Assembly: GCF_964213995.1 (NCBI RefSeq) | Contig: NC_135804.1 | Coordinates: forward strand, 67,828,001-67,892,000 | DNA from: Mustelus asterias | Taxonomy: Eukaryota | Reading direction: 5' to 3' | DNA: 64,000 nucleotides | In this document: positions 1,531-42,678 of the stretch, in pieces | How the letters are laid out: each line of letters opens with the position of its first letter | Numbering within the stretch: the stretch's first letter is position 1 | Made by a program: the position numbers and the translations under genes | The notes under the pieces: model-generated | What the model was told of the DNA's origin: nothing | Databases searched by the model: none | What the model saw: only the letters and a program-made list of their open reading frames with translations

Positions 1531-2767
1531 CCATATGTGTGATCGCATTCTTTGTGCTGATGATACAGTTCCTTTCTGATATTTTGATGAAATAAAGGTT
1601 TGAATATGAGATATTTATGAAATTCATAAACCTGTTCCTCTGTGCTCACTCATTTTATGCAATTGCTTAATAAACAAAATTGTTTCGTGGGAGTTAGTCC
1701 GAGGTCACCAAATAAAATGTACCATTTACTGTGAGTACTGTTTTCGCCAGTGGAGATAGTAACGTAGGGACAAATGTTTCCAGCAGACGATTGGTCACGT
1801 TGAGACAACCAAACACACAAAAATTAATGCAGATGAAATCGAGAAGCTTATTGCCAATAATGAGCAATTGAACAAAAATGTGCTCAGTGTCGAGAAGCAA
1901 CTTCCATGCACAAAAGATCAATTTGCCAGTGAAAAGCTGGAATTGATATGAACAATTTCAAATGTGTCGCATCAATGATAATCTGGATGAAATAAATGCA
2001 ACAACAATAAATCTTCCGTTAAAATTAGATTAACTGCAATATCAAAAAATTCCAGAATGTGTTGTGCAACAAAATATTTGAACAGGGAAAATGAATGGCC
2101 AGTGAAGCATAAGAGGTGCTTAAAAATCAAGACTGATGGACGGTTTGAACTTCGTCGTGAGACGGTTAAGAAGATTTTTGAACTTTGATGCAATCCTGAA
2201 ATTATGGAAGATGATCTTATATACTTGAAGGATCGATGATCATGGATACTTATATACAGTTGCATGTTAGGCTGACACAGAGTGTGGAGCAGCCGGAATC
2301 CTACCAATGGTTGAGTTTACAAGAGACAATTTGAAACAAACATATCAGTTTCATTTTCATGGCGGGTGTTTTACATCCTGTTGCACTGGTCAAGTAGCAT
2401 AGCGGGGAGGGAAATTTAGCAGAAGACAAATTACTTGAAATGTGCGTGGTCTTCCACGATACGCCCAGGCCGTTTTGTCGAACGCAATCTGCATCGCACC
2501 CAATGTGCCCGATGTGAATTAAAATGTTTGTGACATCGTTACCATATCATTCGTGAATTCAGCATGGCCGGTTCCTCTTCCTGTACCTCCTGCCACCCAT
2601 CTCCCACCCCCACAGCGTGACGTAATGTCGGCATTATTTACACATGAGACAGAATTTTACGAAAAAAATTCTAAGTGCCAAGCTGGCGTGAAAATGGGAG
2701 AGTTTTATTTCCGTTTATTGGCCGAGGCCAAATCAATACCTTACAGACGTAGAGAAGTGGGCATCGT

Positions 2768-3275
2768 GGGCAACACGGTGGCATAGTGGTATGCACTGCT
2801 GCCTCACAGCGCCAGGGACCCGGGTTCATTTCCGATCTCGGGTTGTGTATGAGTGGAGGGTGCACATTCTCCCCGTGTCTGCGTGGTTTTCCTCCGGGTG
2901 CTCTGGTTTCCTTCCACAGTCCTAAGGTTTTACACCCTGTTGCACTGGTGAAGTAGCATAGTGGGGCGGGAAATGTTAGCAGAAGCCAAATAACGTGAAA
3001 TGTGCCTAGTCTTCCACGATACGCCCAGGCCATTTTGTCGAGCGCAATCTGCATCGCACCCAGAGTGTGCCCGATGTCATTTAAATTTTTGTGACATCGT
3101 TACAATGCCATTCACCGGTTAGGTCGATTGGCCACGCTAAACTGACCCTAGTGTCAGGGCATTCGTAGAGTAAATACGTGGGGTCACGGGAATAGGGCCT
3201 GGATGTGATTGTGGTCAGTGCAGACTCAATGGGCCGAATGGCCTCCTTCTGCCTGGAGGGATTTTATGGATTCTA
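2768..3275 (+). mobile_element. HE1-type tRNA-derived SINE interrupted by a ~185-bp insert (2927-3113)
   Basis: A/B-box head (ggtggcatagtgg ... gggttcatttcc), core gtgtctgcgtggttttcctccgggtgctctggtttcc, CR1-like tail. Confidence 0.85.
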
Positions 3276-16988: not shown

Positions 16989-17540
16989 GAAAATGTTGCA
17001 ATTTGAAAAATGAAAGATACATGGATATTTTCACGTCACACATCAAAGGAGGAGTTGGGAGAGGCGGGTGGTGGTGACAATGATAGCACACATAGAGATT
17101 TAAACGATTCCTGGAATGATAATCAAATGAAATCCAAATTCATGTGAGAAAATAAGATGAACATTAGCAAATTAAGGAGCGAATCAAGCGTATCACGTCT
17201 GGATATTGGGTAGAGCAAAGATTAGCCAATCTATTAAAATTAAAAGTAAATTAGAGTAGAAAATGACGCAGTCTTTCTTTCATGTTATCCATATATGTGG
17301 AATGGCTAGAATTCGGAAATCCGACGACGGATGAGCATGGTCAACAACGATGGAGTGCCTTGCGTGGAGTGAGTTTCAAGGCAAACAGGAAATCCACAAG
17401 ATATATTTGGAGAAAAAATCCACCTGCGATTTTCGAAAATGTCAAAGGCCTGATGTAAAGGCAGTTACCGAGGAAAAGATACACGAAGGTGAATACATCG
17501 ATTATGCAGTCATCGCGCAACACTTCCTTGTTTGCTTAAT

Positions 17541-17669
17541 TTAGCTTTTCGTTTTCACGGCTGCGTATGTTAACCTTGTTTCTCCGAATGTCGTTTTTGA
17601 CGATGACCTGGAACCTGCCAGATTCAGAGCAACGTAAGTCAATTTGCTCTCAGCGGTGCTCTGTCTGGT
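17541..17669 (-). CDS. Exon 7 (last coding exon): ITIMs LTYVAL and LTYAAV, stop TAA
   Basis: Acceptor ttgatttacag; TRQSTAESKLTYVALNLAGSRSSSKTTFGETRLTYAAVKTKS*. Confidence 0.87.
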   Translation of the reverse strand, partial: TRQSTAESKLTYVALNLAGSRSSSKTTFGETRLTYAAVKTKS

Positions 17670-20600
17670 CTGTAAATCAACGACAGGGAGTATTTTACTA
17701 TTTATTAACTTAAATGTATCGAAATTGCATCAAGTTGATTTTCAATACAATCTCAAAAGCAAATTATAGCAGACAAGATTAAAGTTTCCACGTGGGAATT
17801 GAGATTTACCTCTGTATATACCGTGTGTTCTCTGTGTTGTTTCGGCATTTCGCCACGCTTGGAACCGGTCAGATAAAGAGCAGCGTACAGCAGTTTGCCT
17901 TCGGCTGAATTTCGTTCCTTCTAGGAATTCAATGTTTAGTATTCAGTAAGTTTCATCTTTCGGACACAAAATCTTGCATACATACATACAAATTAGAAAC
18001 CGAAGCAGGCCGCTCAACCTCTAAAACCATTTTGCTATTCCTTAAGACATGTTTGATCCCCGTGTGGCCTCAATTTCACTGTCCTTTCTGCGCCCTGAAT
18101 CTCCAAGCCTTACAAACTGCCCTAATTCAGTAAGCTCCACAAATATCTACGAATTTCCGTATCGCTCTAACCTCCTAGAGTTCCTTGGCATTTCCCAGCC
18201 ATTATTCACAGTAGTTCTTTACTTTGTAAAAATAACAAATCAAATTAGTGTTTTTTCAGTTTTCTCTCCTGTCAATCAAAAAGTGATCGAAGTCAACCTT
18301 GAAGTAATTGAATGAATTTGCCTTCACCGCTCTCTGATTAAATCAGTTCTACAGATGCGTGGCCCACTGAGAGGGAAATAAATCAAATCTCCTCATCCTT
18401 GTCTTAAATGGTAAATCATGCTTTTTCAAACGGCATCACGTATTTTTACCCTTTGCTACAAAGTATCACATTTTTGCAACGTCCATTCTGTCAAGACGAC
18501 TCAGCATTTTCTACTTTTCAAAAGATCACTTAGTCTTCTAAAGTGAGGAGGGTACAGGCCCAATCTGTTAAAAATGTCCTCATTAAATAACACGCTCATC
18601 CCAGCAATCAATCTGGTGAAACTTCTCTTAATTATTTGAACTGAAGTTATTTTATTTCTTCATGAAGGACCAAAGCTGCGTACAATACGTTTGGGCGGGA
18701 ATTTTACCGGCACGCCCACGCCGATTCCGGGGGCGGTCGCGACTCGGAGGACGGCTTCCTCCGAAGGCCTCGGGCGGGATAGTACAGACCTCGGGCGGAG
18801 GTGCCGGTCAGATTCTTCCTTCGGCACCAATTCTCAGCTGCAGCACTACACTTCATAATCCACTCCTCTTGCAATGAACGGTAACATTCCATTGGGCATC
18901 CCAGCCACTTATGCGCCTTCTCAACCATATATTTCGGTTCATATTATTGTGTTCTGATTCATGTACCGGGACATCCGTATGTCTCTGTACATCAGAGTCT
19001 AAAATATCTTCGCATAAAAAAAATACGTGTTTTATTCTGACTGCTAAAATGGACAAATTCGCGATCTCTCACGTCATCTGTCATTTTTTGCACACTCTTT
19101 ACCTATCCGTGACCCTCTGCAGACTCCATATTTCCCCCTTGCCACTTACTCACCCATCTACTTTCTTTCATCAACATCTTTAGCAGCCATGCGTATAGTG
19201 TTATCATCCAAGTCGTTGATATCAATTGTAAATAATTGAGGACCCAAGACTGATACACATGACACTACAATTGATACATATTTTTCCAACCAGATAAAAG
19301 GCCAAAATGTGCCTACTCTATGTTTCCTGACAGCTAGATAGTCCTTGATAGATGCTATCACCTGTGTCATGTGATCTTGCTATGTGTGGAACCTTTGATG
19401 TCGAACATGATGGAATGTCTTTTCGAAATCCACAGGATCCACAGTAACTCCACAGGTTCGGTTTTATTCACTTTGCTTGTTACTTTCTCAAATAACTCAT
19501 ACATTATGTAATAATAATTTCCAGGTTACAACGCCATGTTTACTCTGCTAACCTCCATCAGATTTCCCAAGTGCCCTGTTACAACTCCTTTATTAATGGA
19601 TTCCAGCATTTTCCCAATGGCAGAAGTTAAGATAATTGGCCTGTAGTTTCTGGAATACTGTTTCCCTCCTTTCTTGAGCAAAGGAGCTACATTCGCTGTT
19701 TAATTCAAATCTAATTTGTCGCTGCCAGAATCTAGGACGTTTTGAAAATTTAAATCCAAGTCATCCATTCTCTCAGCAGTTACTTATTGTAAGACCCTCG
19801 TAACAGTTGCATCATGCTTGGGACTTTTCAGATTTTTCGTTATATTATTTTTTCAGCAGCATCATCCTGCTGAAAGTAATCGTTTTATGCTCTTGCTTCC
19901 GTTTCGCATCGCGATATCCAATTATTTCTGGTATATGCTTTGTATCCTCTACAGCGATATATGTTCCGTTGATTCTGCTTTCGCTTGATTGGCAATCCTA
20001 ATTCGTCAGACCCGCTCTTTGGCGGAGCAGCACATTATAAGTAGTTGCTTTTACAACACCTGTGAAAACTCTTCCGATTTGTGCTGCATATTAATAGCTA
20101 ACGATCGGTCCTGCTCTGATGTTTCACTTCATTTTTAGCCATTATTCGCTGTAATTTATGCAACTTGTTCGTCTAACCTGCCAGTAAACTTCAGGGAATT
20201 GATTTTGTTTATTTCAATTTGATCCTGTTGATAACTTCCTTAGTAAGCCGCGGATAATATGTCCGTCCCCTCGAGATGTTTTGTTCTTTCTGACTCAAAT
20301 GGCTGAGAATTAGAAAACATCTCCTTAAGTTTCTGATAAAAGCACGACAGCTGTGGATGCTGGAATAACAACAGAAAATGCTTGAAAATCTTAGCAGGTT
20401 GACAGCATCTGTAGAGAGAAAATAGAACGAAGTCCAGACCACCCTTCGTCAGAGCTTCGTCAGATCCCTTGTCAGCATTTTGCAATGACAAAGGATCGAG
20501 TATGGAAGTAGCAAAGATCAAAGACCATTACAGCACAGAAACAGGTCGTTTGGCCCTCCAAGCTGAAATGTCAGCTTGTGAAAGAGAAAGACGGGCTGCC

Positions 20601-23600
20601 TGAACAGTATAAATAGATTTTTTTTTCCTGAATCGCCTGGTGGATACATTTTTTTATTCTTAAGCAAGGAATAACGGGTGATCTCATTTTAAACCGCGTA
20701 AGAAGGATAGGCAATAGTGTTGCTCTCTATTTTCGTTACCGATTCTACACTGAGATTAGAAATTTGAATTTTATTTGTAATATAAATGCCGTGGCACGTT
20801 TTCACCATGCTGCAGCTTGGTTTGCACAACAAGAAATGCAAATCTGCGAACCTTATTCTCACTATCTTTAGTAGCCGAAAAAGGTATGTCATTTTAGCTA
20901 ATATAGATGGAAAGTTAAAACTGTATTGAACTATTCAAAAAGCTGGCAGAGTTTGCAAACGCTTCGACCATTTTTCTAATTTTACTTGTTTATACATAAA
21001 GTTGCGCTTTTCCAGAAAAGGGGAAAAGTCAAGTCCAAATCCCCACATGTTTAAAAGAGATTTATTTAATGTGATGTCATTCACGTGAACTTGAGAACAC
21101 AAGTTCAGGATTGAGAACAAAATGTGCTTACCTCATCTGTACGCTGTGTAGTATTTATTGATTTTTTCTTTGCACCTGGTGAAATTCGAAAAGGATAACG
21201 TATAAATAGGGGGCATATTTGCATTTGACCCGATGTCAATTAAGTAAAATGCAATTCATGCCAGCAAGCTATAGTGATACGCTGATTTCGTAATATATCA
21301 CAAAATGTTCAAACCAAACGAATTTGTTTCGCTATCGCTTCTGTATTAAAGCTACGCAGGCACCATTGCACTATTTAAGTTACATTTTTATGGTTAGATA
21401 ATGCAGTTCGGAAAATGAAGCTGTGAGCATTATAATGTCAGATGCTCATGTAATACTTGAGTTGAAGCAACATGTAAGTGTGAAGGTATTTTTCCGTCAG
21501 CTAATTATGCGAATTATACCAAAAAGCAGCTTTGCTCCCGCTTATAGTTACTCGAATCGGATATTTTAAGATTTCGCCTACCAGTAAATTATTTCCTTCA
21601 GTGTGAAAATTCTCATTCATACCTTTGCACTTTATGACTCCAATCACTAGCATTAGGGTCAAAAATAGAATTGCAAGTACACCACCGGACCATCCACCGA
21701 CCATAAGAACATTGATTTTAGAGGGATTAGCTATCAAAATTAGAAAATGTCATGTCAGCCATATGTACACAGCTATCAATATCAAATGCATAATTTTCAA
21801 TTACGCTGTGAATCGAACATCATGATACAAAATATAAAACTTCAGTACATCATTTTCATTATCGATATTTATGCAGCTGTTTTACGAATCGTTCGAAAAA
21901 ACGTGGTTGAAACATATAGATCATAGAATCCTTGAGTCGTAGAATCCCTACAGGGCAGAAGGAGGCCATTCATCCCATCGAGCCTGCACCGACAAAATTC
22001 CCACGCAGGCTCTATCCCCGCAACTCCACGTATTTACGTTTCTAAGGCCCCTGACACCAAAGCACAATTTAGCATTGCCCACCTAACACACACATATTTG
22101 GAGTATGGGAGGGAACCGGAGCAGCCGGAGGAAACCCGCGCTTTCGCAGGCAGAATGTGCAAACTCCACACAGTCATCCGAAGCCCGAATTGAACACGGG
22201 TCCCTCGCACTGTGAGGCAGCTTACCTCTGTGCAAGCCTGTTGGAGAAAGAGCAGCAATGTTGAAGAAGGTGCCCATTGAATGGGCACATTCCCATTCAT
22301 GACTATACAGAATGCAATCGTTTTCAACTGATTGTGCCAATCAAAAAACAATTAAAATGTTGTTCCAAGTTTCATTGCACCACACGCAGAAAAGGTCCAA
22401 ACAAATCGCTTGAGATCATCTTTCAAGGAAAGATGCATTACCGTGTATTTACTCATCTTCTCACAATTACCTGTGACCCTATTTTTAGTCGCATTACGAG
22501 TGAGTAACAACTTTATAAATGAGGAATCAAGTTGGTTTAGTTCGTATCTGCAGCGAGATGAAAAGATTCAATTGTTCGATTCCATAGCTCAGCGATCCAT
22601 TATTTTTCAGTGCCTCGATTGAACATCGATGCTGCATCATTTTCTAAGTTGCAATTTTATGCGGTTAATCTGATTTATGGGAGCAATACTGAAGACTCAA
22701 ACCCATTATTGGTTAGGTTGCATGATGCAGTCTACAATATATCCTATTTTAAAACCAAATGATTGGAAACCTTCGCCCAAAGAATACAATAAGTTTCATC
22801 AATATATGAGCATCAAGCTACTCCAGTAATCACTTCCTATGCACCATCGTTTTTCATGCATTTTTGTGAAGGGCGAAAGACTAAAAACTATCATATTTCA
22901 TATAAGATTACCTTCATCAAAAAACGTATAGCTGGCATTTGCTAACATTGAGCTTGAAACGTGATAAACTTGACAGATATAAACTGTGCCTTGTTCGATC
23001 GCCTGCTGTTTCAGGTTGCTGACAACTTCAAAAAGCCCCTCGGAATTTGCTTGTTGTTCATTTTGGAATCCGCTGAGAATTTGAGCACCGTTTTTATGCC
23101 AGGTGAGGTTAAATCCTTTCGGGTAAAAAGCTGCAGTTTTGCACTGGAGCCTAATAGTAGCAGATGAGATCTCTTCGGATGATATGGACATAATTTTCAG
23201 GGGAGCCGCTGGAGCTAAATTCAAGATAACAAGACAGATAAATTGAAAAAGTGAGCTTCTGCTCTAAAAAATTGTAATTTTATTAATTACGTGCAGCTTG
23301 TTCTTGGCAAGCAAGTTTCTTTAATAATCAGTATTTTTATATTGCTGCGCGGTGTTTTTCATAGATTTTCTAGGTCCCTCCACCCGTACGCTATTAAAGG
23401 ACTACCAGCATGTTTAGCAAAATTGACTTGCATAATTTGTCCCTCTTTATTTAAACCTATGTGTTACAGTCGGTATACTGCATTTAAGGATTTAGCGATT
23501 GGGAGAAGGGGGAGGGCCGGGGGTAGAGGAAAGGTGATAGCGTAGCGATATTATCGCTTGGCTACTAATCCAGAAAATCAACTAACATTCCGGGAACTGG

Positions 23601-26600
23601 CAAGTGGTGGAATTTGAATTCCATTCGCAATATCTGGAACTAAGAACCGACTGACCACCATGAAACCATTGTCGATTGCTTGGGGAAAAACGCGCATCTG
23701 GTTCAGTAATGTATTTTAAGGAACGAAATCTGCCGTCTTCTCGGTCTGGTCTACACGTGACTCCAGATTCACAGCAATGTTTATGGAGTGCTTATACTTC
23801 AATGCAAGGAGCGTAGCAGGTAAGACAGACGAAGTTAGGGCCTTAATGCTCACGAGGAATTTGGATGTGGTTGCGGTGACAGAGACTTGGTTGAAAGAGG
23901 GACAGGACTCGCAGCTGAATATTCCGGGGTACAAGTGTTTTAGGCGAGACAGTGGAGGGGCCCAAAGAGGTGGGGGGGGGGGGTAGCAGTATTAGTTGGA
24001 GAGCATATTACTGCGGTGCAGAGGGAGGACAATTCAGAGGGGTCGTGTAACGAGTCACTCTGGGTGGAGCTTAGAAACAGGAAGGGCGCAGTCACTATGT
24101 TGGGGGTGTATACTACAGGCCCCCCAACAGCCCAAGGGAAGTGGAAGAACGGGTATGTCAGGAGATACTGGATAGGTGCAGGAAAAATAGGGTTGTTGGA
24201 GTGGGAGACTTCAATTTCCCCGGTATAGACTGGAAATCGCTGAGAGCTGGGACTCTGAATGGGGAGGAATTTGTAAAATGCATACAGGAGGGTTCTTTGG
24301 AACAATATGTAGATAGCCCGACTAGAGAGGGGGCTATACTGGACCGAGTACTGGGGAATGGGCCTGGTCAGGTCTTCAAAGTTTCCGTAGGGGAACATGT
24401 GGCAAATAGTGAACAAAATTCTGTTAGCTTTAGGATAGTGATGGAAAAGGATGAGTGGTGTCCCAAGGGTAAGGTGTTGGATTGGGGAAGGTTAACCTTA
24501 GTGGGATTAGGCAGAAATTGGCAGCTCTTGATTGGGAGAGGCTGTTTGAGGGTAAATCCACATCTGGCATGTGGGAGTCTTTTAAGGGACAGTTGTTAGG
24601 GCGACGGGACAGGCATGTGCCTGTAAAAAAGAAGGATAGGAAGGGTAGGATTCGAGAACCGTGGATAACCAGGGAAATTGAGGGACTGATCAAAAAGAAA
24701 AGAGAGGCGTATGTTCGGTCCAGGCAGCGAATAACGGAGGGAGCTCTGGAGGAGTACAAAGGAAGTAGGAAATAACTCAAACGGGGAATTAGAAGGGCAA
24801 AAAGGGGTCACGAAATGTCCTTGGCAGACAGGATTAAGGAGAATCCCAAGGCATTTTATTCATACGTTAGGAACAAAAGGGTTGTCAGGGAAAAAATCGG
24901 ACCTCTCAGGGACAAAAGTGGGGAATTATGCTTGGAGCCCAAAGAAGTAGGGGAGATCCTAAATGAATACTTTGCGTCGGTATTCACAAAGGAGAGGGAT
25001 GTGTTGACTGGGAGTGTCTCGGAGGGGAGTGTTGAACAGTTGGAGAAAATCTCCATTACATGTGAGGAAGTGTTAGGTTTGTTAGAGAATATAAAGACTG
25101 ACAAGTCCCCAGGGCCTGATGGAATCTATCCAAGGCTGGTCAGGGAGATGAGAGATGAAATCGCTGGGTCTCTGGCGCAAATCTTTGTCTCGTCACTGGA
25201 CACAGGTGAGGTCCCAGAGGATTGTAGGATAGCTAATGTGGTCCCGTTATTTAAGAAGGGTAGGAAGGATAACCCGGGTAATTATAGGCTCGTGAGCTTG
25301 ACGTTTGTGGTGGGGAAGTTGTTGGAGAAGATTCTTATGAAAAAGATGTATGCGCATTTAGAAAGGAATAAACTCATTAACGATAGTCAGCATGGTTTTG
25401 TGAGAGGGAGGTCATGCCTCACTAACCTGGTAGAGTTTTTTGAAGAAGTGACTAGAATGGTTGACGAGGGAAGGGCCGTGGATGTCGTCTATATGGACTT
25501 TAGTAAAGCGTTTGACAAAGTCCCTCATGGTAGGTTGGTGAAAAAGGTTGGATCTCATGGGTGGAGAACTGGCTTGGTCACAGAAGACAGAGGGTGGTAG
25601 TGGAAGGGTCTTTTTCCGGCTGGAGGCCTGTGACTCGTGATGTTCCGCAGGGCTCTGTATTGGGACCTCTGCTGTTTTTGATTTATATAAACGATCTGGA
25701 AGAAGGTGTAACTGGGGTGATCAGTAAGTTTGCGGACGACACAAAATTGGCAGGACTTGCAGATAGTGAGGAGCATTGTCAGAGGCTACAGAAGGATATA
25801 GATAGGCTGGAAATTTGGGCAAAGAAATGGCAGATGGAGTTCAATCCTGATGAATGCGAAGTGATGCATTTTGGTAGAAATAATGTAGGTAGGAGCTATA
25901 CGATAAATGGCAGAACAATAAAGGGTGTAGATACGCAGAGGGACCTGGGTCTGCAAGTCCACAGATCCTTGAAGGTGACGTCACAGGTGGAGAAGGTGGT
26001 GAAGAAGGCATATGGCATGCTTGCCTTGATAGGATGGGGCATTGAGCATAAAAGTTGGGGTCTGATGTTGCAGATGTATAGAACGTTGGTTCGGCCGCAT
26101 TTGAAACTGCATCCAGTTCTGGTCGCCACACTACCAGAAGGACGTGGAGGCTTTGGAGAGAGTACAGAGGAGGTTTCCCAGGATTTGCCTGGTATGGAGG
26201 GGCTTAGTTATGAGGAGAGATTGGGTACACTGGGGTTATTCTCCCTGGAAAGAAGGAGGATGAGGGGAGACTTAATAGAGGTGTATAAAATTATGAAAGG
26301 CATAGATAGGGTGAACGGTGGGAAGCTTTTCCCCAGGTCGGTGATGACGTTCACGAGGGGTCATAGGTTCAAGGTGAAGCGGGGGAGGTTTAACACAGAT
26401 ATCAGAAGGAGATATTTTACACAGAGAGTGGATGGGTCCTGGAATGCGCTGCCAGGCAAGGTGGTGGAGGCAGACACACTGGGAACGTTTAAGACTTATC
26501 TAGATGGCCATATGAACGGAGTGGGAATGGAGGGATACAAAAGAATGGTCTCGTTTGGACCAGGGAGCGGCACGGGCTTGGAGGGCCGAAGGGCCTGTTC

Positions 26601-27855
26601 CTGTGCTGTATTGTTCTTCGTTCTTTGTTCTAATGTTGTTTACTCTGAGCAAGGACAACTAAGGATGGACATTAAATGCTCGCCAGCCAGCGAAGCCCAA
26701 GTCCCACGAATAACTAAAAAAAGAAACAATTGTTGACACCAGCCATTCAGGAATAAACGTGGATGATTGAAGCATGAAAGGCGCCTCCAAACGTTTGGAT
26801 TGTGAGCCCCACTCGCTTGTAATTCGCGAAAGGGCATTGAAAATGCAAATATTGCGAGCGACTATAAAATTATTCATCCCGTTACAACGTTCCCACATTG
26901 AAAACGAATTTTACTTGTTAGTTTTGCTTGCGTTTTGCTTGGCAAACTTCAAGTCAAGGAGCATTTCTTTAAGATAGGGATTTGATAAACTTTGCAGTGT
27001 CGTTGCAACTGCAAGTTTTCCACTTTGTTGAACATCTGTTCTTCTAATCAAGTGAATGTGCTTTCAGCGCTCTGCATTTATTTATTTTAATGGTCTATTA
27101 ACCTTCTTTTATTGACTCCATCTACTATGCATGACATATTTTCAACTTACCATATATGAGTACTTGCACCGCAATATCGTTCACAATCGTCCGACGCTGA
27201 ATTTTGACTGCACAGTGATATGTTCCGGCATCCGGTATGTTGACATTCAGGAGTTGAAGGTACGCTCCACCTTTCATTATCTGGAAGCGTTTTCCGCTGT
27301 CCTCCTGCAGCAACCTCTTATTACCATCTTTCCACCAGAAAGCCGTTGCGTTTATAAAGTCGGTATGGAAAGGGAAAGGACATCGCAAGGTTACGTTTGT
27401 GCATCTGAGCGCCTTTATTGGTTCAATATCCGATGTGCCCATAGCAACTATAAACAAAAATGAACACACACATACTAAATCATACATATGCAATAAAAGT
27501 TGATGTATACTACGAAAATAACATCACCCGTTCAGTCCACATATACCGTAACAATTTAATGTGCCTCACTGCTAGAATTATTCTCGAGTTCCAGCATTTG
27601 TATTTCGACTTGAGATTTCTAAATATGTTTTACTCACCCAGACCCTTCCGACCACTAGGAACACGTGGCATGGCAATAAACACAATTTAAAAAAAAATAA
27701 AGACATTCACTTTTCCGCCAACTATGAGATCAACTTACTGTTGCGTCTGGCTCGCGAATCGTCATAGAAAACAAAATGAAAACATAAAATAGAAATCTAC
27801 CTGGAAGGAAAATCGACAAAAAAACTTTGCCCCAAAGCGAACAACCCATGACCAT
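17541..27855 (-). CDS. Spliced 7-exon gene for an inhibitory Ig-superfamily receptor (leader-V-C1-TM-ITIM tail; SIRP-alpha-like / non-rearranging antigen-receptor-like), 348 aa. Exons: 27855-27801, 27447-27151, 23214-22912, 21730-21623, 21175-21132, 17920-17810, 17669-17541
   Basis: All six introns are GT-AG with compatible phases (1,1,1,1,0,0). The joined CDS is 1047 nt with no internal stop: MVMGCSLWGKVFLSIFLPVAMGTSDIEPIKALRCTNVTLRCPFPFHTDFINATAFWWKDGNKRLLQEDSGKRFQIMKGGAYLQLLNVNIPDAGTYHCAVKIQRRTIVNDIAVQVLIYAPAAPLKIMSISSEEISSATIRLQCKTAAFYPKGFNLTWHKNGAQILSGFQNEQQANSEGLFEVVSNLKQQAIEQGTVYICQVYHVSSSMLANASYTFFDEANPSKINVLMVGGWSGGVLAILFLTLMLVIGVIKCKGAKKKSINTTQRTDEKERNSAEGKLLYAALYLTGSKRGEMPKQHREHTVYTETRQSTAESKLTYVALNLAGSRSSSKTTFGETRLTYAAVKTKS*. 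Confidence 0.9.
17810..17920 (-). CDS. Exon 6: cytoplasmic exon with ITIM LLYAAL and TVYTE
   Basis: Acceptor ttcctag, donor GAG|GTAAAT, 111 nt phase 0/0; KERNSAEGKLLYAALYLTGSKRGEMPKQHREHTVYTE. Confidence 0.85.
17985..19990 (-). mobile_element. Old CR1 LINE in intron 5 of the receptor gene
   Basis: SVLGPQLFTIDINDLD fragment; CR1 3' end near 17990. Confidence 0.8.
18693..18820. mobile_element. Short GC-rich MITE-like insertion within the intronic CR1
   Basis: Imperfect inverted ends ggaattttaccggcac / gtgccggtcagattc. Confidence 0.55.
21132..21175 (-). CDS. Exon 5: basic juxtamembrane cytoplasmic exon (GAKKKSINTTQRTDE)
   Basis: Acceptor atccttttcgaatttcaccag, donor GAG|GTAAGC, 44 nt; converts phase 1 to phase 0 as required to join exon 6. 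Confidence 0.82.
21623..21730 (-). CDS. Exon 4: stalk and transmembrane helix
   Basis: Acceptor ttctaattttgatag, donor AAAG|GTATGA, 108 nt; VLMVGGWSGGVLAILFLTLMLVIGVI followed by KCK; no charged TM residue. Confidence 0.88.
21915..22230 (-). mobile_element. HE1-type SINE in intron 3
   Basis: Similar to 3562-3904. Confidence 0.85.
22912..23214 (-). CDS. Exon 3: Ig C1-set domain
   Basis: Acceptor ...gaatttag, donor G|GTAATC, 303 nt phase 1/1; C1 hallmarks LQCKTAAFYP, LTWHKNG, FEVVSNL, YICQVYH. Confidence 0.93.
23530..23781 (+). mobile_element. Older tRNA-derived SINE (resembles SacSINE1/Deu type), split by a CR1; the 3' part resumes at 26632-26725
   Basis: gaccatgaaaccattgtcgattg...catctggttca...ctccagattcacagcaatgt, shared with 47775-47985 and 39175-39660. 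Confidence 0.6.
23782..26631 (+). mobile_element. Young CR1 LINE ORF2 (APE endonuclease + RT, frameshifted) in intron 2, antisense to the gene
   Basis: [39 protein letters not shown]; aatgtt direct repeat at 23776-23781 and 26632-26637. Confidence 0.95.
27151..27447 (-). CDS. Exon 2: Ig V-set domain
   Basis: Acceptor tttttgtttatag, donor G|GTAAGT, 297 nt phase 1/1; motifs NVTLRC, FWWK, LQLLNV..DAGTYHC. Confidence 0.93.
27801..27855 (-). CDS. Exon 1: leader/signal peptide (MVMGCSLWGKVFLSIFLP)
   Basis: ATG at 27855 (alternative at 27849), hydrophobic 18 codons plus 1 nt, phase-1 donor CAG|GTAGAT; joins in frame to exon 2 (...LPVAMG). Confidence 0.8.
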
Positions 27856-27939
27856 ATGGACGCAGAGACAATGATAGATAATACGCTGAGATTATATACC
27901 GAACAGACGGATATCCGTCGGATGGGCGGCTCCGATTTG

Positions 27940-28430
27940 ATTATAAACGACTACTGATCAGTAAGCAAATGACAAGATAATGCTGAGTAAAACAAATGCA
28001 TATCTTTTCGAACAAGATATTCCGGCGTGTGAGTGAGCTGAAGGAGTAATGGGAAACAGAAGGCAACGATATCAAAACAGACTGGTGAGGGAGGGGCGTG
28101 GTGAATGGGACTGGTCCCGGGCGGTATCGATGAACAAATGGTAAATGACACGTCAAGTCCATGAATCGCCATTTTGTCAGCCACCATGGGGGAATAATAT
28201 TGCAAGTCTTCACAAGATAGGTTCCCCAAATATTTGTGTTGGGTTCACTGTGGGCCTACGTTGATCGTTTAAAGTGCCATTGGTCCGAACCGTCTGGTTG
28301 ATTCAGGCAGCAAACAGGTGAGAAGTGAGTAGAGCCTGTCGGATAAATATTAATTATATTGCTTGATGCACAATTAGATTGTGGGAGATGACGCAATTTC
28401 CCGGTAATGGAATATCTGTGGAAATTTCCG
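27940..28430 (-). promoter_or_regulatory. Putative proximal promoter of the receptor gene
   Basis: Repeat-free DNA upstream of the ATG with GC box GGGGCGTGG (28093-28101), ATGACGCAAT (28388-28397) and palindromic GGAAATTTCC (28420-28429); motif matches only. Confidence 0.35.
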
Positions 28431-28789
28431 AATTTGACTTCTAGTGGTTTTTGCTATTTTTCTGCGCGGAGTGTAGACTAGGGTTTTATTGAATTCTGCG
28501 CGCAGTTGGAGGTGGGGCCGAGCTGGTGCTAGACCTCGCCAGTTCGCTTTTCAGCTGTCTTCGTTTCCAACTGCAGGCCTGCAGCGTCAGTTTAAGACAC
28601 TCTTCTCCAAGTATCCTACGAATGAGAATAAACCCGGGACAATATACAAATTGCTGGGTTAAAAATGAGATGTACACTTCTCACAAATCAATCAATTTAA
28701 TACATTTTGCTGATACATTGTATTTTCCTCTGGAGAAATTCGAACACTATCACTAACAAGAAACTGATCTTAACATGGACTATAGATAT

Positions 28790-38122: not shown

Positions 38123-40436
38123 AATAATGTAAAATACACCGCCAAAATGTCTGTATGGTGGTAGTAAGTCTCAGATACGCAAACAAACCTCTATAATCGA
38201 TGCGCCTCATGCAGATATTATGGTTCAGGTTAGAAACTCCAAAGTGTTTTATGAGGCCCTCCTGAGCCAGACGTTTTGCATCTTGAACATAGCTAGGATA
38301 AGCACGAGATGTTTCATTCTAGGTATTATTCAAGTGAGCCCACAAGGGAGCTTTTATGAGACAAAATTTAATTAATTATTTAATCAAAATGTATAGCAAG
38401 AAAATTGCCAAGAACGTTTATCAATTAGAAACAAGATCAAAACAGTCACACCAGTATTTAACCCTTAATGCATCTATGTAATGATGTTCCAATCAAAACC
38501 AAAATCCAATAAACAAAATCCCTCAGACAGATTTATCACTGCACAGGCTAAAGCTCACATGATACTAGAATCCAGTGTGTTGAATTCTGCTGTCAAATGA
38601 TCTTGAAAACTCAGAGCACCCTGCAGTCGCATGAGCTCCGCAACGCACCAAACCACAGATTGATTACTGCAGCATGGCTATAAGCCTTTCTTTCATTAAA
38701 CTGGTAAAATTTTCAAAGCAGAACTGGGAGAGAAACTTATTTTCTAGCTTGCTGCTGAGACTGCTTCGAAGACTGCAGCCAGACCTACCCATAGCTTTTT
38801 TCTCCACCCAACAATGACATCACCTAAGGCTGTGAGCATGAAATCATTTTTTAAGAAACATCTCTTAAAGGGACACTACCCTCACACAGTAAAACTATAA
38901 ATGTTCCTGCCATTACAAAAACAAGACAATATTCGCTAAGCAATTCTGCAGTAGCAACTGCTGATCGAATATCCCATCATCAATCTTCTGTTATGGCTGA
39001 TCATCAGCACCTTCGGCAGTAAAGTTACAATGTAATGAAAAAAAAACCGATTGTTCGAGCAGTATAATTGCTGAACACGTTATACACGTTGGCTATGTTT
39101 CACATTACTTTATTTTTTTTCAAAATTTGCTGCATTGTTTCTTCTAAATTGATTACATAGTTCACTTTCCTAGTTGGAGAGCTGATGGCGCAGTGGGAAT
39201 CCAACTTCTACCAATAATTCAGAGACTCAGGATAATGGTTTGGGAACATTTGTTAAATGTCATCGTGGTATCCACTGGAAATTTAATTAACTCAATATAA
39301 TTTGCAATTGAAAGCTAGTCTTATTAAAGTTGATCATAATTTGAAAAAAAATTTGATTGTTTTGCACACAGCCTATGCATCACCAAAGGTTTCCAGGAAG
39401 TAATTCTGCCATCTTTGCATTGTCTAACATACAAGTGATTGCACACCGACAGAAATATTATTAGTTATTAATTGTCTTCTGAAGTTACCGAAGAAAGGCA
39501 CTTGTGGCATGCGGCGTGCAGTTTTATAATGTACAATACACGGCCAAAATATCTGTGTGGTGGTAGTAAGTCTCAGTAATGCGAATTCAGTTCAAGAAGA
39601 ATTACGGAAGGGTATCAGATTCAGACTATGCAAACAGCACCACCAACCCGTGAATTAACTGGGATAAATGAGAAACTGCTGGAGTTCTGATCTTACAAGG
39701 GTAAAACTCCCCGAAATTAAAAATTATTTTTCGATCAGGTCTATCATCTTATCGTTCGGCTACAGGTGTCATCCACATTAAGTGTTGTATTGGTGACTGA
39801 ATACATTCACACTGAAGCGAAGTACATAAAGTATGCGGATTTTAACTTCTGGTTGCAAATGCGAAGGTAAATAAATCGCATTTCAAAACTACATGCAAAT
39901 TAAACAAAAACAAACACGTAATACATTTTATGAACAGGTATTCCTGAGCAGCATCACAGCAAAGCAAAAATCTTTGCAAAACGTTTCTCGTGGAATATGG
40001 GAGAGGCTGCCAAAACGTCACTGTTGCCCATATATATTTCCTTTTGAAAAGTTCGTCGTGGTCGCTTTCTTGAATGCTATTATAATTCTGCTGCGGGAAA
40101 GCCCGTTTTGTTCGTGGGAAAGGAATTTCAAGATGTTCATCATGTTCGGCGGAAACCTTCTTTCGTTTCCTCTGCCAATGTGCCAGCGTCGGTGAACGAT
40201 TCTTTCAAAGTTCATCCAGACTAAGGACTAACAAGCCATTGCAAACCATAAGCCACTGCCGCAAAAGTGGACAGCATTACTGTTTGATGTGTCAAAGATT
40301 AATATTGCCACGAATGGATATCCACTTCTTTTGCAGTTGGTGTGCACCTACAACTTCATTGACGCCAATCTAGTCAACACAGTATCAGGATGTTACATCA
40401 ATCTCCAAGTGTTACGCCAGCAGGATTCGACTCATG

Positions 40437-42678
40437 GAGCCCGATTTTACCATTGCGTCGCGCCCATTTTCGGACGCAAAAACGTGGTAAAGTCGGGTGT
40501 GAGGCCATTGCGTCTGCGCAGATGCCCACTTTACCAAGGCCGGAAAATGGCCGCGATCCAATTCGCGCCCGAAACGGGCGCAACGGCGATTTAAATGAAT
40601 TTGCATTCATTTAAATTGAATTAATGGGCTGCCCGCCCACGTTTATCAGCATTTTCCCCTTTACCATCAAGTTCATAAGTCCAGATATGGCGTGAAATAG
40701 ACATGCTCGGCCAAGGTCTGTTTCGAGAGCTCCAGCTTCTGAAGAGGTGAGTTCAGAGCTTCCAACGGCTGTCTGACTCAGATCGGTGCTGGGAAGGGTG
40801 GGGGGGGGGGGGGGGGGCTTGGCGGGGCGGTGGAGAGAGGCGGGACAGATCATTCTGATCATTCTCTGGTCAGGCGGGGAGGGATGTCAGATCGTTTTCT
40901 GGTGGATGGGGAGAGGGAGGAATGCCCGATGGTGTCTGGTTGGGGGGAGGGCGGGGACGGGGCGGAGGCAGAGAGAGGTCAGATTGTTGTCTGGTGGGGG
41001 GGAGGAGGGAGACCTGATCATTCTCTGGTGGGGGGAGACGGAGAGGTTGGGGGGGGGGCGTTGGCAGGGGGTCACCATTGGGGGGGTGGATTGATAAGGG
41101 GTACAGTTATGTTGTGGGGATGGGGTGATGTCTGTGGGGACCATCGCTCCTGCTTCCCACTCCCGAGCCGCAAAAAGTGGACAAAGTGGCCCGGGAGCGA
41201 TGTGACATGGGCACATGTTTAATATTTTTCTCACTGCGCATGCACAATTCAAAGCTCCGATCCTTGCAACAGCGTTTCCGGCACGCTAAGCCCCGCACAC
41301 ATCGCATTTCAAGCTTTTTTGTCAGGCTAAGTGCGTATGGGGGCGCTTCGGAACAGATTTCCCAAGGGGCCCGACTTTAACATTTTGATTCGACATGCTG
41401 AATTTGGGCGCAATTCAGATCTGTACTGTAAAGGCGTTCTCAGGCGCCCCCATACGCATTTAGCCTGAAAAAAAAGTAATGAGTCTGAATTGTGCTGTGG
41501 GCGGGGCTTATCGCTCCAAAACGCTGCTGCTCCGATCGGAACTTTGAACTGCACATGCACAGTGAGAAAACAATTTGCAAAATGTGCCCCTGTCACATCT
41601 CTCCCAGGCTGCAAAAAGCGGATAAAGCAGCGGGGGAGTGAAAAGCGTGAACGATGGCCCCCACAGAGATCACCCCACCCCCCACAACACGACTGTCGCC
41701 ATTATCCAGCCAATCCCCTCCACTACCCAGATCGATCATGACCCTGTGCCCCCTTCCCCCTACCGATTGCCCGCAGAGTGGCAGCAGACCCCTCCCTTAC
41801 TTGTCACCCCCCAACCCCCCCACCAGAGATCCATCTGGCCTCCCTCCCACCCCACCAGTGAGCGATTGGGCCTCCCTCCCACCAGAGAATGATCGGGCAT
41901 CCCCCCCACCAGAGGATGATCATCCTCCCCCAACCAGATAATTTTCTGGCCTCCCCTCCCGCAACTAATGATTGGGCCTCCCCCCGCCCCCCCCCCCCCC
42001 CCCCCACCAAATAGTGATCGGGCCTGCCCCCGAGAGAATGATCGGGCCTCCCACCTCCCTCCCCCCTCCAGTAAATGATCAGGCCTCCCTCCTTCCACCC
42101 TCCCGGAGAACGATCTGGCCTCTCCCCACCCCACCAGAGAATGATCGGGCCTCCATCCTCCCTCCATTCTCTCCCCAGCAGCCCCCCCCCCCCACCCCCC
42201 CTCCCACCAGAGATGCATTTGACCCTCCTCCCTCACCCTCACCAGAGGACGATTGGGCCTCTCTCCTCCCCTCCTTCGCCCCCGCAACCAGAGAATGATC
42301 TGACCCACCTCCCTTCCCCCCAACCCAACGATCTGAGTCACAGAGTCGCTGGAAGCTCTGAACATACGTCTTCAGAAGCTGAAGCGCCCGAAACACTCCT
42401 TTGCTGAACATGTCTGTTTCACGCTGAATCTGGATGGGCGAACACAATGGTAAACGGAGAAATGCTGGTAAAGGTGGGCGGACAGCTCATTAATTCAATT
42501 TTAATGCATGCGAATGCACTTAAACCCCATTGCGCCTGTTTCGGGCGCGATTTGGATTGTGGCCATTTTCGGGCCTTGGTAAAGTGGGCATCTGCGTGGA
42601 CGCGGGCATGGATCGTGTTAATGGCCTCACGTCAGACTTTACCAAGTGTTCGCGTCCGTACAATGGTAGAATCGGGCC
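40437..42678. mobile_element. ~2.2-kb foldback (long-TIR) non-autonomous DNA element, Harbinger-like ends, with internal G-rich/C-rich minisatellite
   Basis: Ends gagcccgattttaccattg / caatggtagaatcgggcc; arms are reverse-complementary inward to ~41350/41440. Confidence 0.85.

What the first reader, a model, noticed from the sequence alone, without database searches (positions are those of the whole stretch)
17541..27855. Intact V-C1-TM-ITIM inhibitory receptor gene in a probable shark genome (SIRP-alpha-like, non-rearranging antigen-receptor-like)
Seen in sequence: seven GT-AG exons splice in phase into a 348-aa type-I membrane protein with a V domain, a C1-set domain, an uncharged TM and multiple ITIMs. 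Established: C1-set domains occur in few jawed-vertebrate families (Ig, TCR, MHC, beta-2-microglobulin, tapasin, SIRP, some B7 members); ITIMs recruit SHP-1/2; SIRP-alpha is V-C1-C1 with a four-tyrosine tail. Inference: this is a germline-encoded inhibitory receptor with a light-chain/TCR-like ectodomain and a SIRP-alpha-like tail. It is a candidate self-recognition or checkpoint receptor of cartilaginous fish and is probably uncharacterised. I cannot confirm novelty without a search.
Basis: partly seen in the sequence, partly recalled or inferred. Interest (0 to 1): 0.9.

Follow-up and report, generated by a model that had tools for sequence, protein, structure and literature searches.

The report
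Shark SIRP-alpha-like inhibitory receptor gene
An apparently intact seven-exon gene in a shark-type genome encodes a membrane receptor with one variable-like and one constant-type antibody-fold domain and an inhibitory tail laid out like that of mammalian SIRP-alpha; similar genes are already predicted in many sharks and rays, so it is a new family member, not a new kind of gene.

Summary
On the minus strand, seven exons (27855-17541) with six GT..AG introns and matching phases add up to 1047 nt, which is 348 codons plus a stop, with no internal stops.

- **Domains:** Exon 3 is a C1-set Ig domain (Pfam 44.8 bits, cutoff 21). Exon 2 is an Ig V-like domain below all Pfam cutoffs. Exon 4 is an uncharged TM segment. 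Exons 6 and 7 are two homologous modules with three canonical ITIMs and one non-canonical tyrosine.
- **Family:** The gene belongs to a family predicted in 14 chondrichthyan species. NCBI often auto-names its members [quoted passage not shown], that is SIRP-alpha-like.
- **SIRP-alpha link:** A family profile aligns colinearly with rodent SIRP-alpha, including all four tail tyrosines (152 bits). The tail alone scores 32.8 bits, and 0 of 1000 shuffles reach that.
- **Differences from SIRP-alpha:** It has one C1 domain rather than two, a decayed J-like motif, and tyrosine spacing of 23-14-23 against 24-17-24.
- **Gaps:** No RNA data exist in the runs served, so expression and function are inferred.
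- **Earlier notes:** The scan noted similar genes about 33 kb and about 9 Mb away in this genome.

I rate it a new member of a known kind, of moderate interest.

The parts
27801..27855 (-). Exon 1: start codon (27855) and hydrophobic leader, ends in phase 1
   Evidence: It begins with the same three residues as the horn-shark relative P0012. Donor is GTAGAT.
27151..27447 (-). Exon 2: Ig V-like domain with a fused, decayed J-like G strand (phase 1 to 1)
   Evidence: Pfam Ig_3 23.8, V-set 22.0, ig 20.8 and I-set 20.1 bits, all under their cutoffs. It scores 92.7 bits on family profile positions 31-125 and is 53% identical to P0012's V domain. It keeps the family's invariant residues C22, W37, D72 and G74.
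23215..27150 (-). Intron 2 (3936 nt), holding a LINE on the + strand (about 23780-26640)
   Evidence: Endonuclease and RVT_1 Pfam hits on + strand ORFs at 24075-24596, 24776-25597 and 25534-26733. Intron ends are GT..AG.
22912..23214 (-). Exon 3: C1-set Ig domain (phase 1 to 1)
   Evidence: Pfam C1-set 44.8 bits against a cutoff of 21. It scores 134.4 bits on profile positions 128-224. It is 65% identical to whale-shark P0003 and 63% to zebra-shark P0156. It sits in a 17-row elasmobranch clade with SH-aLRT 99.
21623..21730 (-). Exon 4: stalk, uncharged transmembrane helix, basic stop-transfer (phase 1 to 1)
   Evidence: (profile positions 232-261, 7.9 bits).
21132..21175 (-). Exon 5 (candidate): 44-nt basic juxtamembrane exon (phase 1 to 0)
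   Evidence: It is the only 44-nt candidate with a good pyrimidine tract (0.75) and a GTAAGC donor. It ranks 1st of 207 candidates against homologues' juxtamembrane segments. The family profile does not confirm it, and no RNA was available.
17810..17920 (-). Exon 6: tail module 1 (ITIM LLYAAL, then TVYTE 23 residues later; phase 0 to 0)
   Evidence: (profile positions 284-318, 21.4 bits). It is homologous to exon 7 (52.6% over 19 aa).
17541..17669 (-). Exon 7: tail module 2 (ITIMs LTYVAL and LTYAAV, 23 residues apart) and TAA stop
   Evidence: (profile positions 319-359, 22.5 bits).
21765..22340 (.). Highly repeated SINE-like element in intron 3
   Evidence: Summed contig depth runs from about 15,500 to about 268,000 here in X1, against about 40-75 in most other bins, and many repeat joints and loose ends fall at 21934-22190. 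No Rfam family matches.

Best explanation
This is an intact-looking, germline-joined (non-rearranging) gene for a type I membrane glycoprotein of a SIRP-like family that is widespread in cartilaginous fish. The protein has a leader, one V-like Ig domain, one C1-set Ig domain, an uncharged transmembrane helix and a tail of about 95 residues. The tail is built from two homologous exon modules, each carrying two tyrosines 23 residues apart.

The most likely mechanism is that of SIRP-alpha. The V-like domain binds a cell-surface ligand, Src-type kinases phosphorylate the tail ITIMs, and each tyrosine pair docks the tandem SH2 domains of an SHP-1/SHP-2-type phosphatase. The phosphatase then damps activation of the cell that carries the receptor.

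Shown here: gene structure, domain types, family membership, and colinear similarity of the family to SIRP-alpha including the tail.

Inferred: splicing in vivo, expression, phosphorylation, phosphatase recruitment, the inhibitory outcome, and the ligand, which is unknown.
For: - Gene structure: 7 exons, 6 GT..AG introns, compatible phases, 348 codons, no internal stops.
- C domain: C1-set at 44.8 bits against a cutoff of 21.
- Exon order: the exons map in order and nearly end to end on a profile of 13 relatives.
- Conserved residues: the window exons keep all invariant columns of the V alignment (C22, W37, D72, G74) and of the C1 alignment (C24, W38, C80).
- Exhaustive C1 search: 481 hits at E<=1e-3. 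The best single-domain hits are V-C1-TM proteins of 200-410 aa at 40-67% identity, and all 10 of 10 looked up are chondrichthyan.
- Profile search: 23 of 29 hits are chondrichthyan, and 10 of those 23 are auto-named SIRP-alpha/beta/gamma-like. The best hit from another group is rodent SIRP-alpha (E 4e-39, 152 bits), ahead of a frog Ig-like protein (87 bits) and carp NITR13 (65 bits).
- Colinear alignment with SIRP-alpha: V+D2 scores 67.1 bits and D3+TM+tail scores 84.0 bits, with the four tyrosines in register.
- Tail-only profile: 32.8 bits on the SIRP-alpha tail; 1000 shuffles average 0.78 (sd 2.2, max 15.8) and 0 reach the real score; NITR13 scores 9.5.
- Tyrosine spacing: 23-14-23 here and in most relatives, 24-17-24 in SIRP-alpha.
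- TM segment: no charged residue.
- C1 tree: the window sits in a 17-row elasmobranch clade with support 99.
- Background: SIRP-alpha's V + two C1 layout and its ITIM/SHP-1/2 signalling are stated in passages of PMC12975943.
Against: - No RNA evidence: none of the 4 runs found is recorded as RNA, and their contigs cover introns and exons alike. None of the 9 listed joints lies at an exon boundary.
- The V exon passes no Pfam cutoff.
- The V exon alone finds titin, DCC, NCAM, CD276 and PD-L1 among solved structures, and no SIRP chain among the 60 shown.
- On the ectodomain, the family profile scores an IgA1 chain (117.9 bits) and UrIg2 (108.5) above SIRP-alpha 2wng (100.5, 6th). The SIRP assignment therefore leans on the tail and on the overall layout.
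- There is one C1 domain, not two, and no second C1 exon in the window.
- The second tyrosine lacks a hydrophobic +3 residue.
- The J-like GxGTxL motif of relatives has decayed here.
- SIRP-alpha's place next to the family in the C1 tree is weakly supported (77) and on long branches.
- The named-protein searches score only candidates that share exact 5-residue words.
- The shuffle control keeps composition only, so other ITIM-rich tails were barely tested.
- Six of the 8 listed exon variants in DNA runs change the protein, one to a stop in a single low-depth contig.
- E5 is unconfirmed by the family profile.
Confidence: 0.72

Rival explanations
1. The reading frame is intact, but this copy is a young, redundant tandem duplicate that is silent or on its way to becoming a pseudogene. 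It would look like a gene only because too little time has passed for it to decay.
For: - No RNA run holds it.
- The locus lies in a 60,960-bp tandem duplication that is 99.08% identical over the 3,040 bp visible.
- Six of 8 listed exon variants are non-synonymous, and one is a stop at E6 codon 31 in one X4 contig of depth 4.3.
- This copy has Leu where the family has a conserved Pro after the C1 hallmark, while contigs of all four runs (part of the depth in X4) carry the two changes that together give Pro.
- The J-like motif has decayed.
Against: - All seven exons are open and all 12 splice dinucleotides are canonical.
- All invariant family residues are kept.
- Three canonical ITIMs and the exact 23-14-23 spacing are kept.
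- The stop variant rests on one low-depth contig that is about 2% divergent, and it may come from a paralogue or be an error.
- Only 8 exon variants were listed, and 43 further differences were not shown.
Confidence: 0.15
2. The family is not related to SIRP by descent. It would be another V-C1 lineage (B7/butyrophilin-like, or an independent offshoot of antigen-receptor precursors such as UrIg) that acquired a similar double-ITIM tail by convergence or exon shuffling.
For: - The C exon also just reaches the butyrophilin Ig-C model (27.3 bits against a cutoff of 27).
- The V exon's best single-domain solved matches are CD276 and PD-L1.
- The ectodomain profile scores Ig chains and UrIg2 as high as SIRP-alpha, and CD276 scores 84.6 bits.
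- NCBI's automatic names for relatives also include NCR3-ligand-1-like, tapasin-related-like, TCR-beta-like and MHC class II beta-like.
- ITIM tails are short and evolve fast.
Against: - The tail match to SIRP-alpha is colinear over four tyrosines with near-identical spacing, and no shuffle reaches its score.
- Only 2 of 13 family members match the butyrophilin Ig-C model, while 13 of 13 match C1-set.
- SIRP-alpha is the best named hit outside cartilaginous fish by 65 bits.
- UrIg2 has a VJ domain plus nine C1-type domains, and its paper has 0 occurrences of SIRP or ITIM (PMC12227049, passages).
Confidence: 0.1

Closest known systems
SIRP-alpha (SHPS-1, PTPNS1, CD172a) of mammals
   Same: - Type I membrane protein with an N-terminal V-type Ig domain followed by C1-set Ig.
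- Uncharged TM segment.
- Tail of two modules, each with two tyrosines.
- The family profile aligns colinearly with it at 152 bits, with the four tyrosines in register.
- Tyrosine spacing is 23-14-23 here against 24-17-24 in SIRP-alpha.
   Different: - One C1 domain instead of two (PMC12975943 passages).
- The V domain is shorter: 56 residues between its cysteines, and SIRP-alpha carries an extra 8 residues in the profile alignment.
- Only 21% V identity and 27% C1 identity.
- The J-like motif has decayed.
- The second tyrosine is not a canonical ITIM.
- Ligand binding (CD47) and SHP recruitment are untested.
Predicted 'tyrosine-protein phosphatase non-receptor type substrate 1-like', 'SIRP beta-1/gamma-like' and uncharacterized proteins of sharks, rays and chimaera (e.g. 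XP_067905931.1 of Heterodontus francisci, XP_048462082.1 of Rhincodon typus)
   Same: - Same exon-by-exon layout.
- 53% (V) and 59-65% (C1) identity.
- Same tail modules and spacing.
- Same clade in the C1 tree.

This is the family the gene belongs to.
   Different: - No relative above 67% identity in the C1 domain was found, so this is a distinct paralogue or a gene of a species not in those sets.
- The relatives are computational predictions.
- I found no paper describing them.
UrIg / UrIg2 (non-rearranging VJ-C1 genes of elasmobranchs; PDB 9dmx)
   Same: - Germline-joined V(J) exon followed by C1-set domains in cartilaginous fish.
- UrIg2 is the 2nd-best solved match of the family profile at 108.5 bits.
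   Different: - UrIg2 has a VJ domain plus nine C1-type domains, and its N-terminal domains form Fc-like dimers (PMC12227049: abstract and passages).
- That paper has 0 occurrences of ITIM or SIRP.
- The gene here has one C1 domain and a four-tyrosine tail.
NITR (novel immune-type receptors of bony fish)
   Same: - VJ-type V domain, TM segment and ITIM tail.
- Carp NITR13 is hit by the family profile at 65 bits.
   Different: - The precomputed Pfam list for the NITR13 hit has no C1-set.
- The tail-only profile scores 9.5 bits on it, against 32.8 for SIRP-alpha.
- That NITRs have a second I-type domain or none, and are confined to bony fish, is recalled and not tested here.
[quoted passage not shown] 2019)
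   Same: It is a non-rearranging VJ-type IgSF gene, listed beside SIRP, NITR, CD79, CD8 and NKp30 as a joined-VJ family (PMC11599192 passage) and called MHC-linked (PMC10751288 passage). From recall only: it may have an ITIM in its tail.
   Different: From recall only: PRARP orthologues outside birds have V-C2 rather than V-C1. The paper is not held and no PRARP sequence was available, so nothing was tested.
B7 family (CD276/B7-H3, PD-L1) and butyrophilins
   Same: - IgV-IgC ectodomain.
- The best single-domain solved matches of the V exon are CD276 and PD-L1.
- The C exon touches the butyrophilin Ig-C cutoff.
   Different: - C1-set is the far better model: 44.8 against 27.3 bits, with 13 of 13 family members matching C1-set against 2 of 13 for the butyrophilin model.
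- That B7 and butyrophilin tails lack a SIRP-type four-tyrosine layout is recalled and not tested here.
- CD276 scores 84.6 bits against 100.5 for SIRP-alpha with the family profile.

Membership tests
SIRP family (SIRP-alpha type) | Membrane-distal V-set Ig domain of joined VJ type | tested here: inconclusive
   The window exon is Ig-like but under every Pfam cutoff (V-set 22.0 against 26). All 13 of 13 relatives match V-set at E<=0.001, and P0012 matches over the whole model at 30.4 bits. Relatives have a GxGTxL J-like motif that has decayed in this gene.
SIRP family (SIRP-alpha type) | [quoted passage not shown] | tested here: not met
   There is one C1 exon. tblastn of the C1 exon against the whole window finds only itself, and the next-best hit has E = 1.1. 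Most relatives also have one C1 domain, though skate P0023 has two.
SIRP family (SIRP-alpha type) | C domain of the C1 set | tested here: met
   Pfam C1-set scores 44.8 bits against a cutoff of 21 over model positions 3-85 of 86.
SIRP family (SIRP-alpha type) | Uncharged TM and a cytoplasmic tail with four tyrosines in two pairs (ITIMs) | tested here: met
   The TM core has no charge. The tyrosines sit at 12 and 35 of E6 and at 12 and 35 of E7, giving spacing of 23-14-23 against 24-17-24 in rodent SIRP-alpha. Three of the four fit the ITIM pattern.
SIRP family (SIRP-alpha type) | Detectable sequence relationship to SIRP-alpha over ectodomain and tail | tested here: met
   The family profile scores 152 bits (E 4e-39) on rodent SIRP-alpha. 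The tail-only profile scores 32.8 bits, and 0 of 1000 shuffles reach it. The exon-to-protein matches are weak on their own: C1 scores 35.4 bits at 27% identity, and V scores 32.0 bits over 32 aa.
SIRP family (SIRP-alpha type) | Binds CD47; phosphorylated tail recruits SHP-1/SHP-2 | not testable with these tools
   This needs binding and pull-down experiments.
SIRP family (SIRP-alpha type) | Conserved synteny with tetrapod SIRP clusters | not tested
Ten long non-LINE ORFs elsewhere in the window gave no Pfam match, so no neighbouring gene was recognised.
Chondrichthyan SIRP-like V-C1 family (public predictions only) | Leader / V / C1 / TM / four-tyrosine tail, colinear with the family profile, and placement inside the family clade | tested here: met
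   The exons map on profile positions 31-359 in order. C1 identity is 59-65% and V identity 43-53% to the nearest members. The window sits in a 17-row clade with support 99, inside a 40-row family clade with support 93.
UrIg / UrIg2 | VJ domain followed by several C1-type domains (nine in nurse shark UrIg2) | tested here: not met
   This gene has a single C1 exon. The UrIg2 architecture is taken from PMC12227049 passages.
Rearranging Ig/TCR V genes | V exon ending after the F-strand cysteine with a flanking RSS heptamer and nonamer | tested here: not met
   The exon runs 60 nt past the cysteine codon through a G strand to a GT donor. The only CACAGTG nearby (27211-27217, + strand) lies inside the exon, over the His-Cys-Ala codons on the other strand. 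The window has 11 matches against 8.9 expected.
B7 / butyrophilin | IgV plus a B7/butyrophilin-type IgC domain | tested here: inconclusive
   C2-set_3 scores 27.3 against a cutoff of 27, but C1-set scores 44.8. Only 2 of 13 relatives match C2-set_3. CD276 scores 84.6 bits against 100.5 for SIRP-alpha.
Tapasin / TAPBPR | Large N-terminal tapasin domain before the Ig domains | tested here: not met
   The leader exon splices straight to the V exon. No Pfam family other than Ig models matches any exon. The name 'tapasin-related protein-like' on relative P0075 is NCBI's automatic label.

The most novel reading that the evidence does not exclude
The chondrichthyan V-C1 family to which this gene belongs would be the true counterpart of tetrapod SIRPs. 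On that reading, the SIRP-alpha type four-tyrosine inhibitory tail and its two-module spacing already existed in the common ancestor of jawed vertebrates. It would have sat on a receptor with the minimal V(J)-C1 layout of an antigen-receptor chain, with the second C1 domain of tetrapod SIRPs added later.

The family may also already contain paired inhibitory and activating forms. Horn-shark P0013 is 87% identical to P0012 but has an arginine in its TM segment and a short tail without tyrosines.
Probability: 0.5. Interest if true: 0.6.

Novelty: new member of a known kind. Interest (0 to 1): 0.4.

Why it matters
SIRP-alpha is the receptor of the CD47 'don't-eat-me' checkpoint. A 2022 review (PMC9652883, passage read) says its evolutionary origin is unknown, with homologues reported only in amniotes.

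A gene family in sharks, rays and a chimaera whose tail matches SIRP-alpha tyrosine for tyrosine would date this inhibitory module to early jawed vertebrates. It would also tie the module to the V(J)-C1 layout discussed as the precursor of antigen receptors.

The present gene adds one intact-looking, tandemly duplicated member. It gives exact exon coordinates for RT-PCR, phosphopeptide and ligand experiments.

It does not reveal a new kind of molecule, because public annotation already predicts many relatives.

Tried and rejected
**RNA evidence.** The look-up of sequencing runs found 4 runs from 1 study, none recorded as RNA. Read laying on 17541-23300 (5,760 letters) showed contigs over introns and exons alike, and 9 joints, all in repeats. 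Splicing could therefore not be tested.

**Paralogous exons in the window.** There are none. Only self-hits were significant, apart from the weak E6/E7 cross-match.

**Other genes in the window.** Ten long ORFs gave no Pfam hit. The rest are LINE ORFs. No Rfam family matches in 17000-28500.

**UrIg identity.** Rejected, because UrIg has many C1 domains and the paper mentions no ITIM.

**Tapasin, MHC class II beta, TCR beta, NCR3-ligand and CDON names on relatives.** These are treated as automatic labels driven by generic Ig similarity.

**Rearranging V gene.** Rejected.

**Ranking SIRP against Ig, TCR and B7 on the ectodomain alone.** Not decisive.

**Rows dropped.** The C1 tree used only domains scoring at least 25 bits and spanning more than 65 profile positions, and at most two domains from each multi-C1 protein. 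Rows below that were dropped before the tree was built.

The pattern used to cut homologue segments failed for 2 of 7 homologues, so 5 were compared in effect.

**Papers.** The searches are. I read only the abstract, outline and passages of PMC12227049, and passages of PMC10751288, PMC11599192, PMC4451681, PMC12975943, PMC9652883 and PMC8236899. Fu et al. 2019 (PRARP), Flajnik et al. 2023 (UrIg) and Dornburg & Yoder 2022 are not held, so what I say of PRARP is recalled. I did not ask for supplements. The supplementary gene lists of PMC12227049 and PMC10751288 could name SIRP-like genes and bear on the novelty claim.

**Unused.** The third homologous-protein search, the third listing of cluster members, the protein-atlas search and fold search.

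Full report
**1. The observation.**

The window has no N. Between 17541 and 27855 the minus strand carries open frames with Ig-like translations. I set exon ends by eye on the minus-strand sequence and checked them by script without joining anything.

| Exon | Coordinates | Length (nt) |
|---|---|---|
| E1 | 27855-27801 | 55 |
| E2 | 27447-27151 | 297 |
| E3 | 23214-22912 | 303 |
| E4 | 21730-21623 | 108 |
| E5 | 21175-21132 | 44 |
| E6 | 17920-17810 | 111 |
| E7 | 17669-17541 | 129 |

- All six introns are GT..AG.
- The phases fit: 0/1, 1/1, 1/1, 1/1, 1/0, 0/0, 0/0.
- No exon has an internal stop.
- The lengths sum to 1047 nt, which is 348 codons plus TAA.
- The introns are 353, 3936, 1181, 447, 3211 and 140 nt long.

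E5 is the only exon that could not be read off an open frame. Of 207 GT-AG, phase-compatible, stop-free candidates between E4 and E6, ten are 44 nt long. Only 21175-21132 has both a pyrimidine tract of at least 0.7 and a consensus donor. It also ranks first of the 207 for similarity to the juxtamembrane segments of the nearest homologues (5 of the 7 homologues yielded a segment). The family profile does not score it.

**2. What the exons encode.**

- **Pfam.** E3 is C1-set at 44.8 bits (cutoff 21, model positions 3-85 of 86). It also just reaches the butyrophilin Ig-C model at 27.3 bits (cutoff 27). E2 matches Ig_3 (23.8), V-set (22.0), ig (20.8) and I-set (20.1), all under their cutoffs. E4, E6 and E7 match nothing.
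- **C1 exon against solved structures.** It finds Ig heavy-chain constant domains and UrIg2.
- **V exon against solved structures.** It finds titin, DCC, NCAM, contactins, CD276 and PD-L1. No SIRP chain is among the 60 shown.
- **TM exon.** E4 has a 28-residue hydrophobic core without a charged residue, followed by basic residues.
- **Tail exons.** E6 and E7 are two homologous modules (52.6% identity over 19 aa). Each has tyrosines at positions 12 and 35. The motifs LLYAAL, LTYVAL and LTYAAV fit the ITIM pattern. TVYTE is followed after splicing by a non-hydrophobic residue, so it is not canonical.
- **Rearrangement.** The V exon runs through a G strand to a splice donor, and no RSS flanks it. 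The gene does not need rearrangement.

**3. Relatives.**

The exhaustive search with the C1 exon alone gave 481 hits at E<=1e-3. The top of the list mixes long multi-C1 proteins with single-domain hits. The multi-C1 proteins have summed scores, are auto-named 'titin-like' or 'uncharacterized', and come from sharks, rays and sea turtles. The single-domain hits are 40-67% identical, sit in proteins of about 200-410 aa, and have the C1 domain at about residues 120-225.

All 10 of 10 single-domain hits that I looked up are chondrichthyan. Searching with the horn-shark protein P0012, a tool-returned protein, gave 18 hits: 17 chondrichthyan and one rodent SIRP-alpha at E 1.5e-11.

A profile of 13 full-length members (A1) gave 29 hits among the 8000 candidates scored:
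- 23 are chondrichthyan, and 10 of those are auto-named SIRP-alpha-like, SIRP-beta-1-like or SIRP-gamma-like.
- Next comes rodent SIRP-alpha (E 4e-39, 152 bits).
- After that come a frog Ig-like protein (87 bits), carp NITR13 (65 bits), one JGI protein and two teleost proteins.

Fourteen species are represented across. They include the chimaera Callorhinchus, skates and rays. No listed hit is the window's own product.

The window exons map on the profile in order and almost end to end. They keep all invariant columns.

In a C1-domain tree of 48 rows (quick method, SH-aLRT only):
- The window sits in a 17-row elasmobranch clade (support 99).
- Its nearest neighbours are horn-shark, zebra-shark, whale-shark and epaulette-shark members.
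- All 40 family domains form a clade (support 93).
- SIRP-alpha D2 and D3 lie just outside on long branches with weak support (77). The tree therefore does not prove the SIRP link.

**4. The SIRP-alpha link.**

The A1 profile aligns with rodent SIRP-alpha in two colinear stretches:
- Leader + V + D2 scores 67.1 bits.
- D3 + TM + the whole tail scores 84.0 bits, with the four tail tyrosines in register.

A profile of the tail columns alone scores 32.8 bits on the SIRP-alpha tail. One thousand shuffles of that tail average 0.78 (sd 2.2, max 15.8), and none reaches 32.8. NITR13 scores 9.5 and three other non-family proteins score 2.6 or less.

Tyrosine spacing is 23-14-23 in this gene and in most relatives, and 24-17-24 in SIRP-alpha.

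Against a SIRP-specific ectodomain, the same profile scores an IgA1 chain at 117.9 bits and UrIg2 at 108.5. That is above SIRP-alpha 2wng (100.5, 6th), SIRP-gamma (85.5) and CD276 (84.6). The tail and the overall layout carry the SIRP assignment.

**5. How it most likely works.**

By analogy with SIRP-alpha (V + two C1 domains, with ITIMs recruiting SHP-1/SHP-2; PMC12975943 passages), the mechanism would run as follows:
1. The V-like domain binds a ligand.
2. The ITIM tyrosines are phosphorylated.
3. Each pair of tyrosines, 23 residues apart, docks a tandem-SH2 phosphatase.
4. The phosphatase inhibits the cell.

All of this is inference, and the ligand is unknown.

**6. Evidence on expression and integrity.**

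The look-up of sequencing runs returned four runs from one study, none recorded as RNA. Laid on 17541-23300, their contigs cover introns and exons alike. None of the nine listed joints is an exon junction. Expression is therefore untested.

Among the listed differences, 8 fall in exons and 6 of them change the protein:
- Five fall in E6, and all five change the protein. One is a stop at codon 31, seen only in one X4 contig of depth 4.3 that differs at 9 of 471 letters.
- Two adjacent changes in C1 codon 90 lie on the same contigs of X1 and X2. Together they give the family-consensus proline.

These may be alleles or the tandem twin. Forty-three further differences were not shown.

**7. Surroundings.**

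Window positions 1-3040 and 60961-64000 are 99.08% identical without gaps (28 mismatches), which indicates a 60,960-bp tandem duplication. An earlier first-reader note describes a like gene ending 33,244 letters before the window. That is within about 140 bp of where one period upstream would put it. Two more notes describe similar genes about 9 Mb away. These are unchecked leads.

The V-C1 intron holds a LINE, and intron 3 holds a very abundant SINE-like repeat.

**8. Known or new.**

I found no paper describing SIRP-like V-C1 genes of cartilaginous fish. The searches were made, over the open-access and bioRxiv library only.

UrIg and UrIg2 are a different, multi-C1 kind (PMC12227049). The PRARP paper, the first UrIg paper and Dornburg & Yoder 2022 could not be read.

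Public annotation already predicts many close relatives and often labels them SIRP-alpha-like. I therefore rate this gene a new member of a known kind and set interest at 0.4.

**9. Limits.**

- Structure prediction and the look-up of encoding contigs were closed, so fold and synteny were not tested.
- The named-protein searches score only candidates that share words with the query.
- The tree used a quick search.

Noticed in passing
window 1-3040 and 60961-64000: The two ends of the window are 99.08% identical (28 mismatches, no gaps). This indicates a tandem duplication with a 60,960-bp period that carries one copy of the receptor gene per unit. It could be a recent segmental duplication or an assembly artefact.
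   Followed up: partly
window 17830 (E6 codon 31) and 17673-18143: One low-depth contig of run X4 (depth 4.3, 9 differences in 471 letters) carries a premature stop before the last three tail tyrosines. All 5 listed E6 variants are non-synonymous. It could be an allele, the twin copy, another paralogue or an error.
   Followed up: partly
window 22944-22945 (C1 codon 90): The assembly has Leu where the family has a conserved Pro after the C1 hallmark. Contigs of all four DNA runs (part of the depth in X4) carry both changes, which together give Pro.
   Followed up: partly
proteins P0012 and P0013 (Heterodontus francisci, same 99.65-Mb contig): P0013 is 87% identical to P0012 but has an arginine inside the TM segment and a short tail without tyrosines. 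This resembles an activating partner in a paired-receptor arrangement like SIRP-alpha/SIRP-beta.
   Followed up: no
window 21765-22340: A SINE-like repeat in intron 3 has summed contig depth of up to about 268,000-334,000 in X1/X2, against about 40-75 in most other bins. Many repeat joints fall here, and no Rfam match was found.
   Followed up: no
window about 23780-26640 (+) and 56938-59466 (-): Two copies of a LINE with endonuclease and reverse-transcriptase ORFs. The copy in the V-C1 intron is broken into several frames, and the second copy has longer ORFs of 571 and 271 aa.
   Followed up: partly
window 27211-27217 (+ strand): A perfect CACAGTG heptamer lies inside the V exon, opposite the His-Cys-Ala codons of the F strand. 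It is at chance level for the window (11 found, 8.9 expected), and no nonamer was looked for.
   Followed up: partly
window 17775-17809 (minus strand, just past the E6 donor): If the E6 donor were skipped, the frame would stay open for 17 more codons. The second tyrosine motif would then gain a hydrophobic +3 residue, giving a possible alternative short tail.
   Followed up: no
window 40743-42400: A GC-rich stretch (GC 0.54 in 40001-42000) has long Gly/Arg-rich open frames on both strands. It is probably a simple or satellite-like repeat.
   Followed up: no
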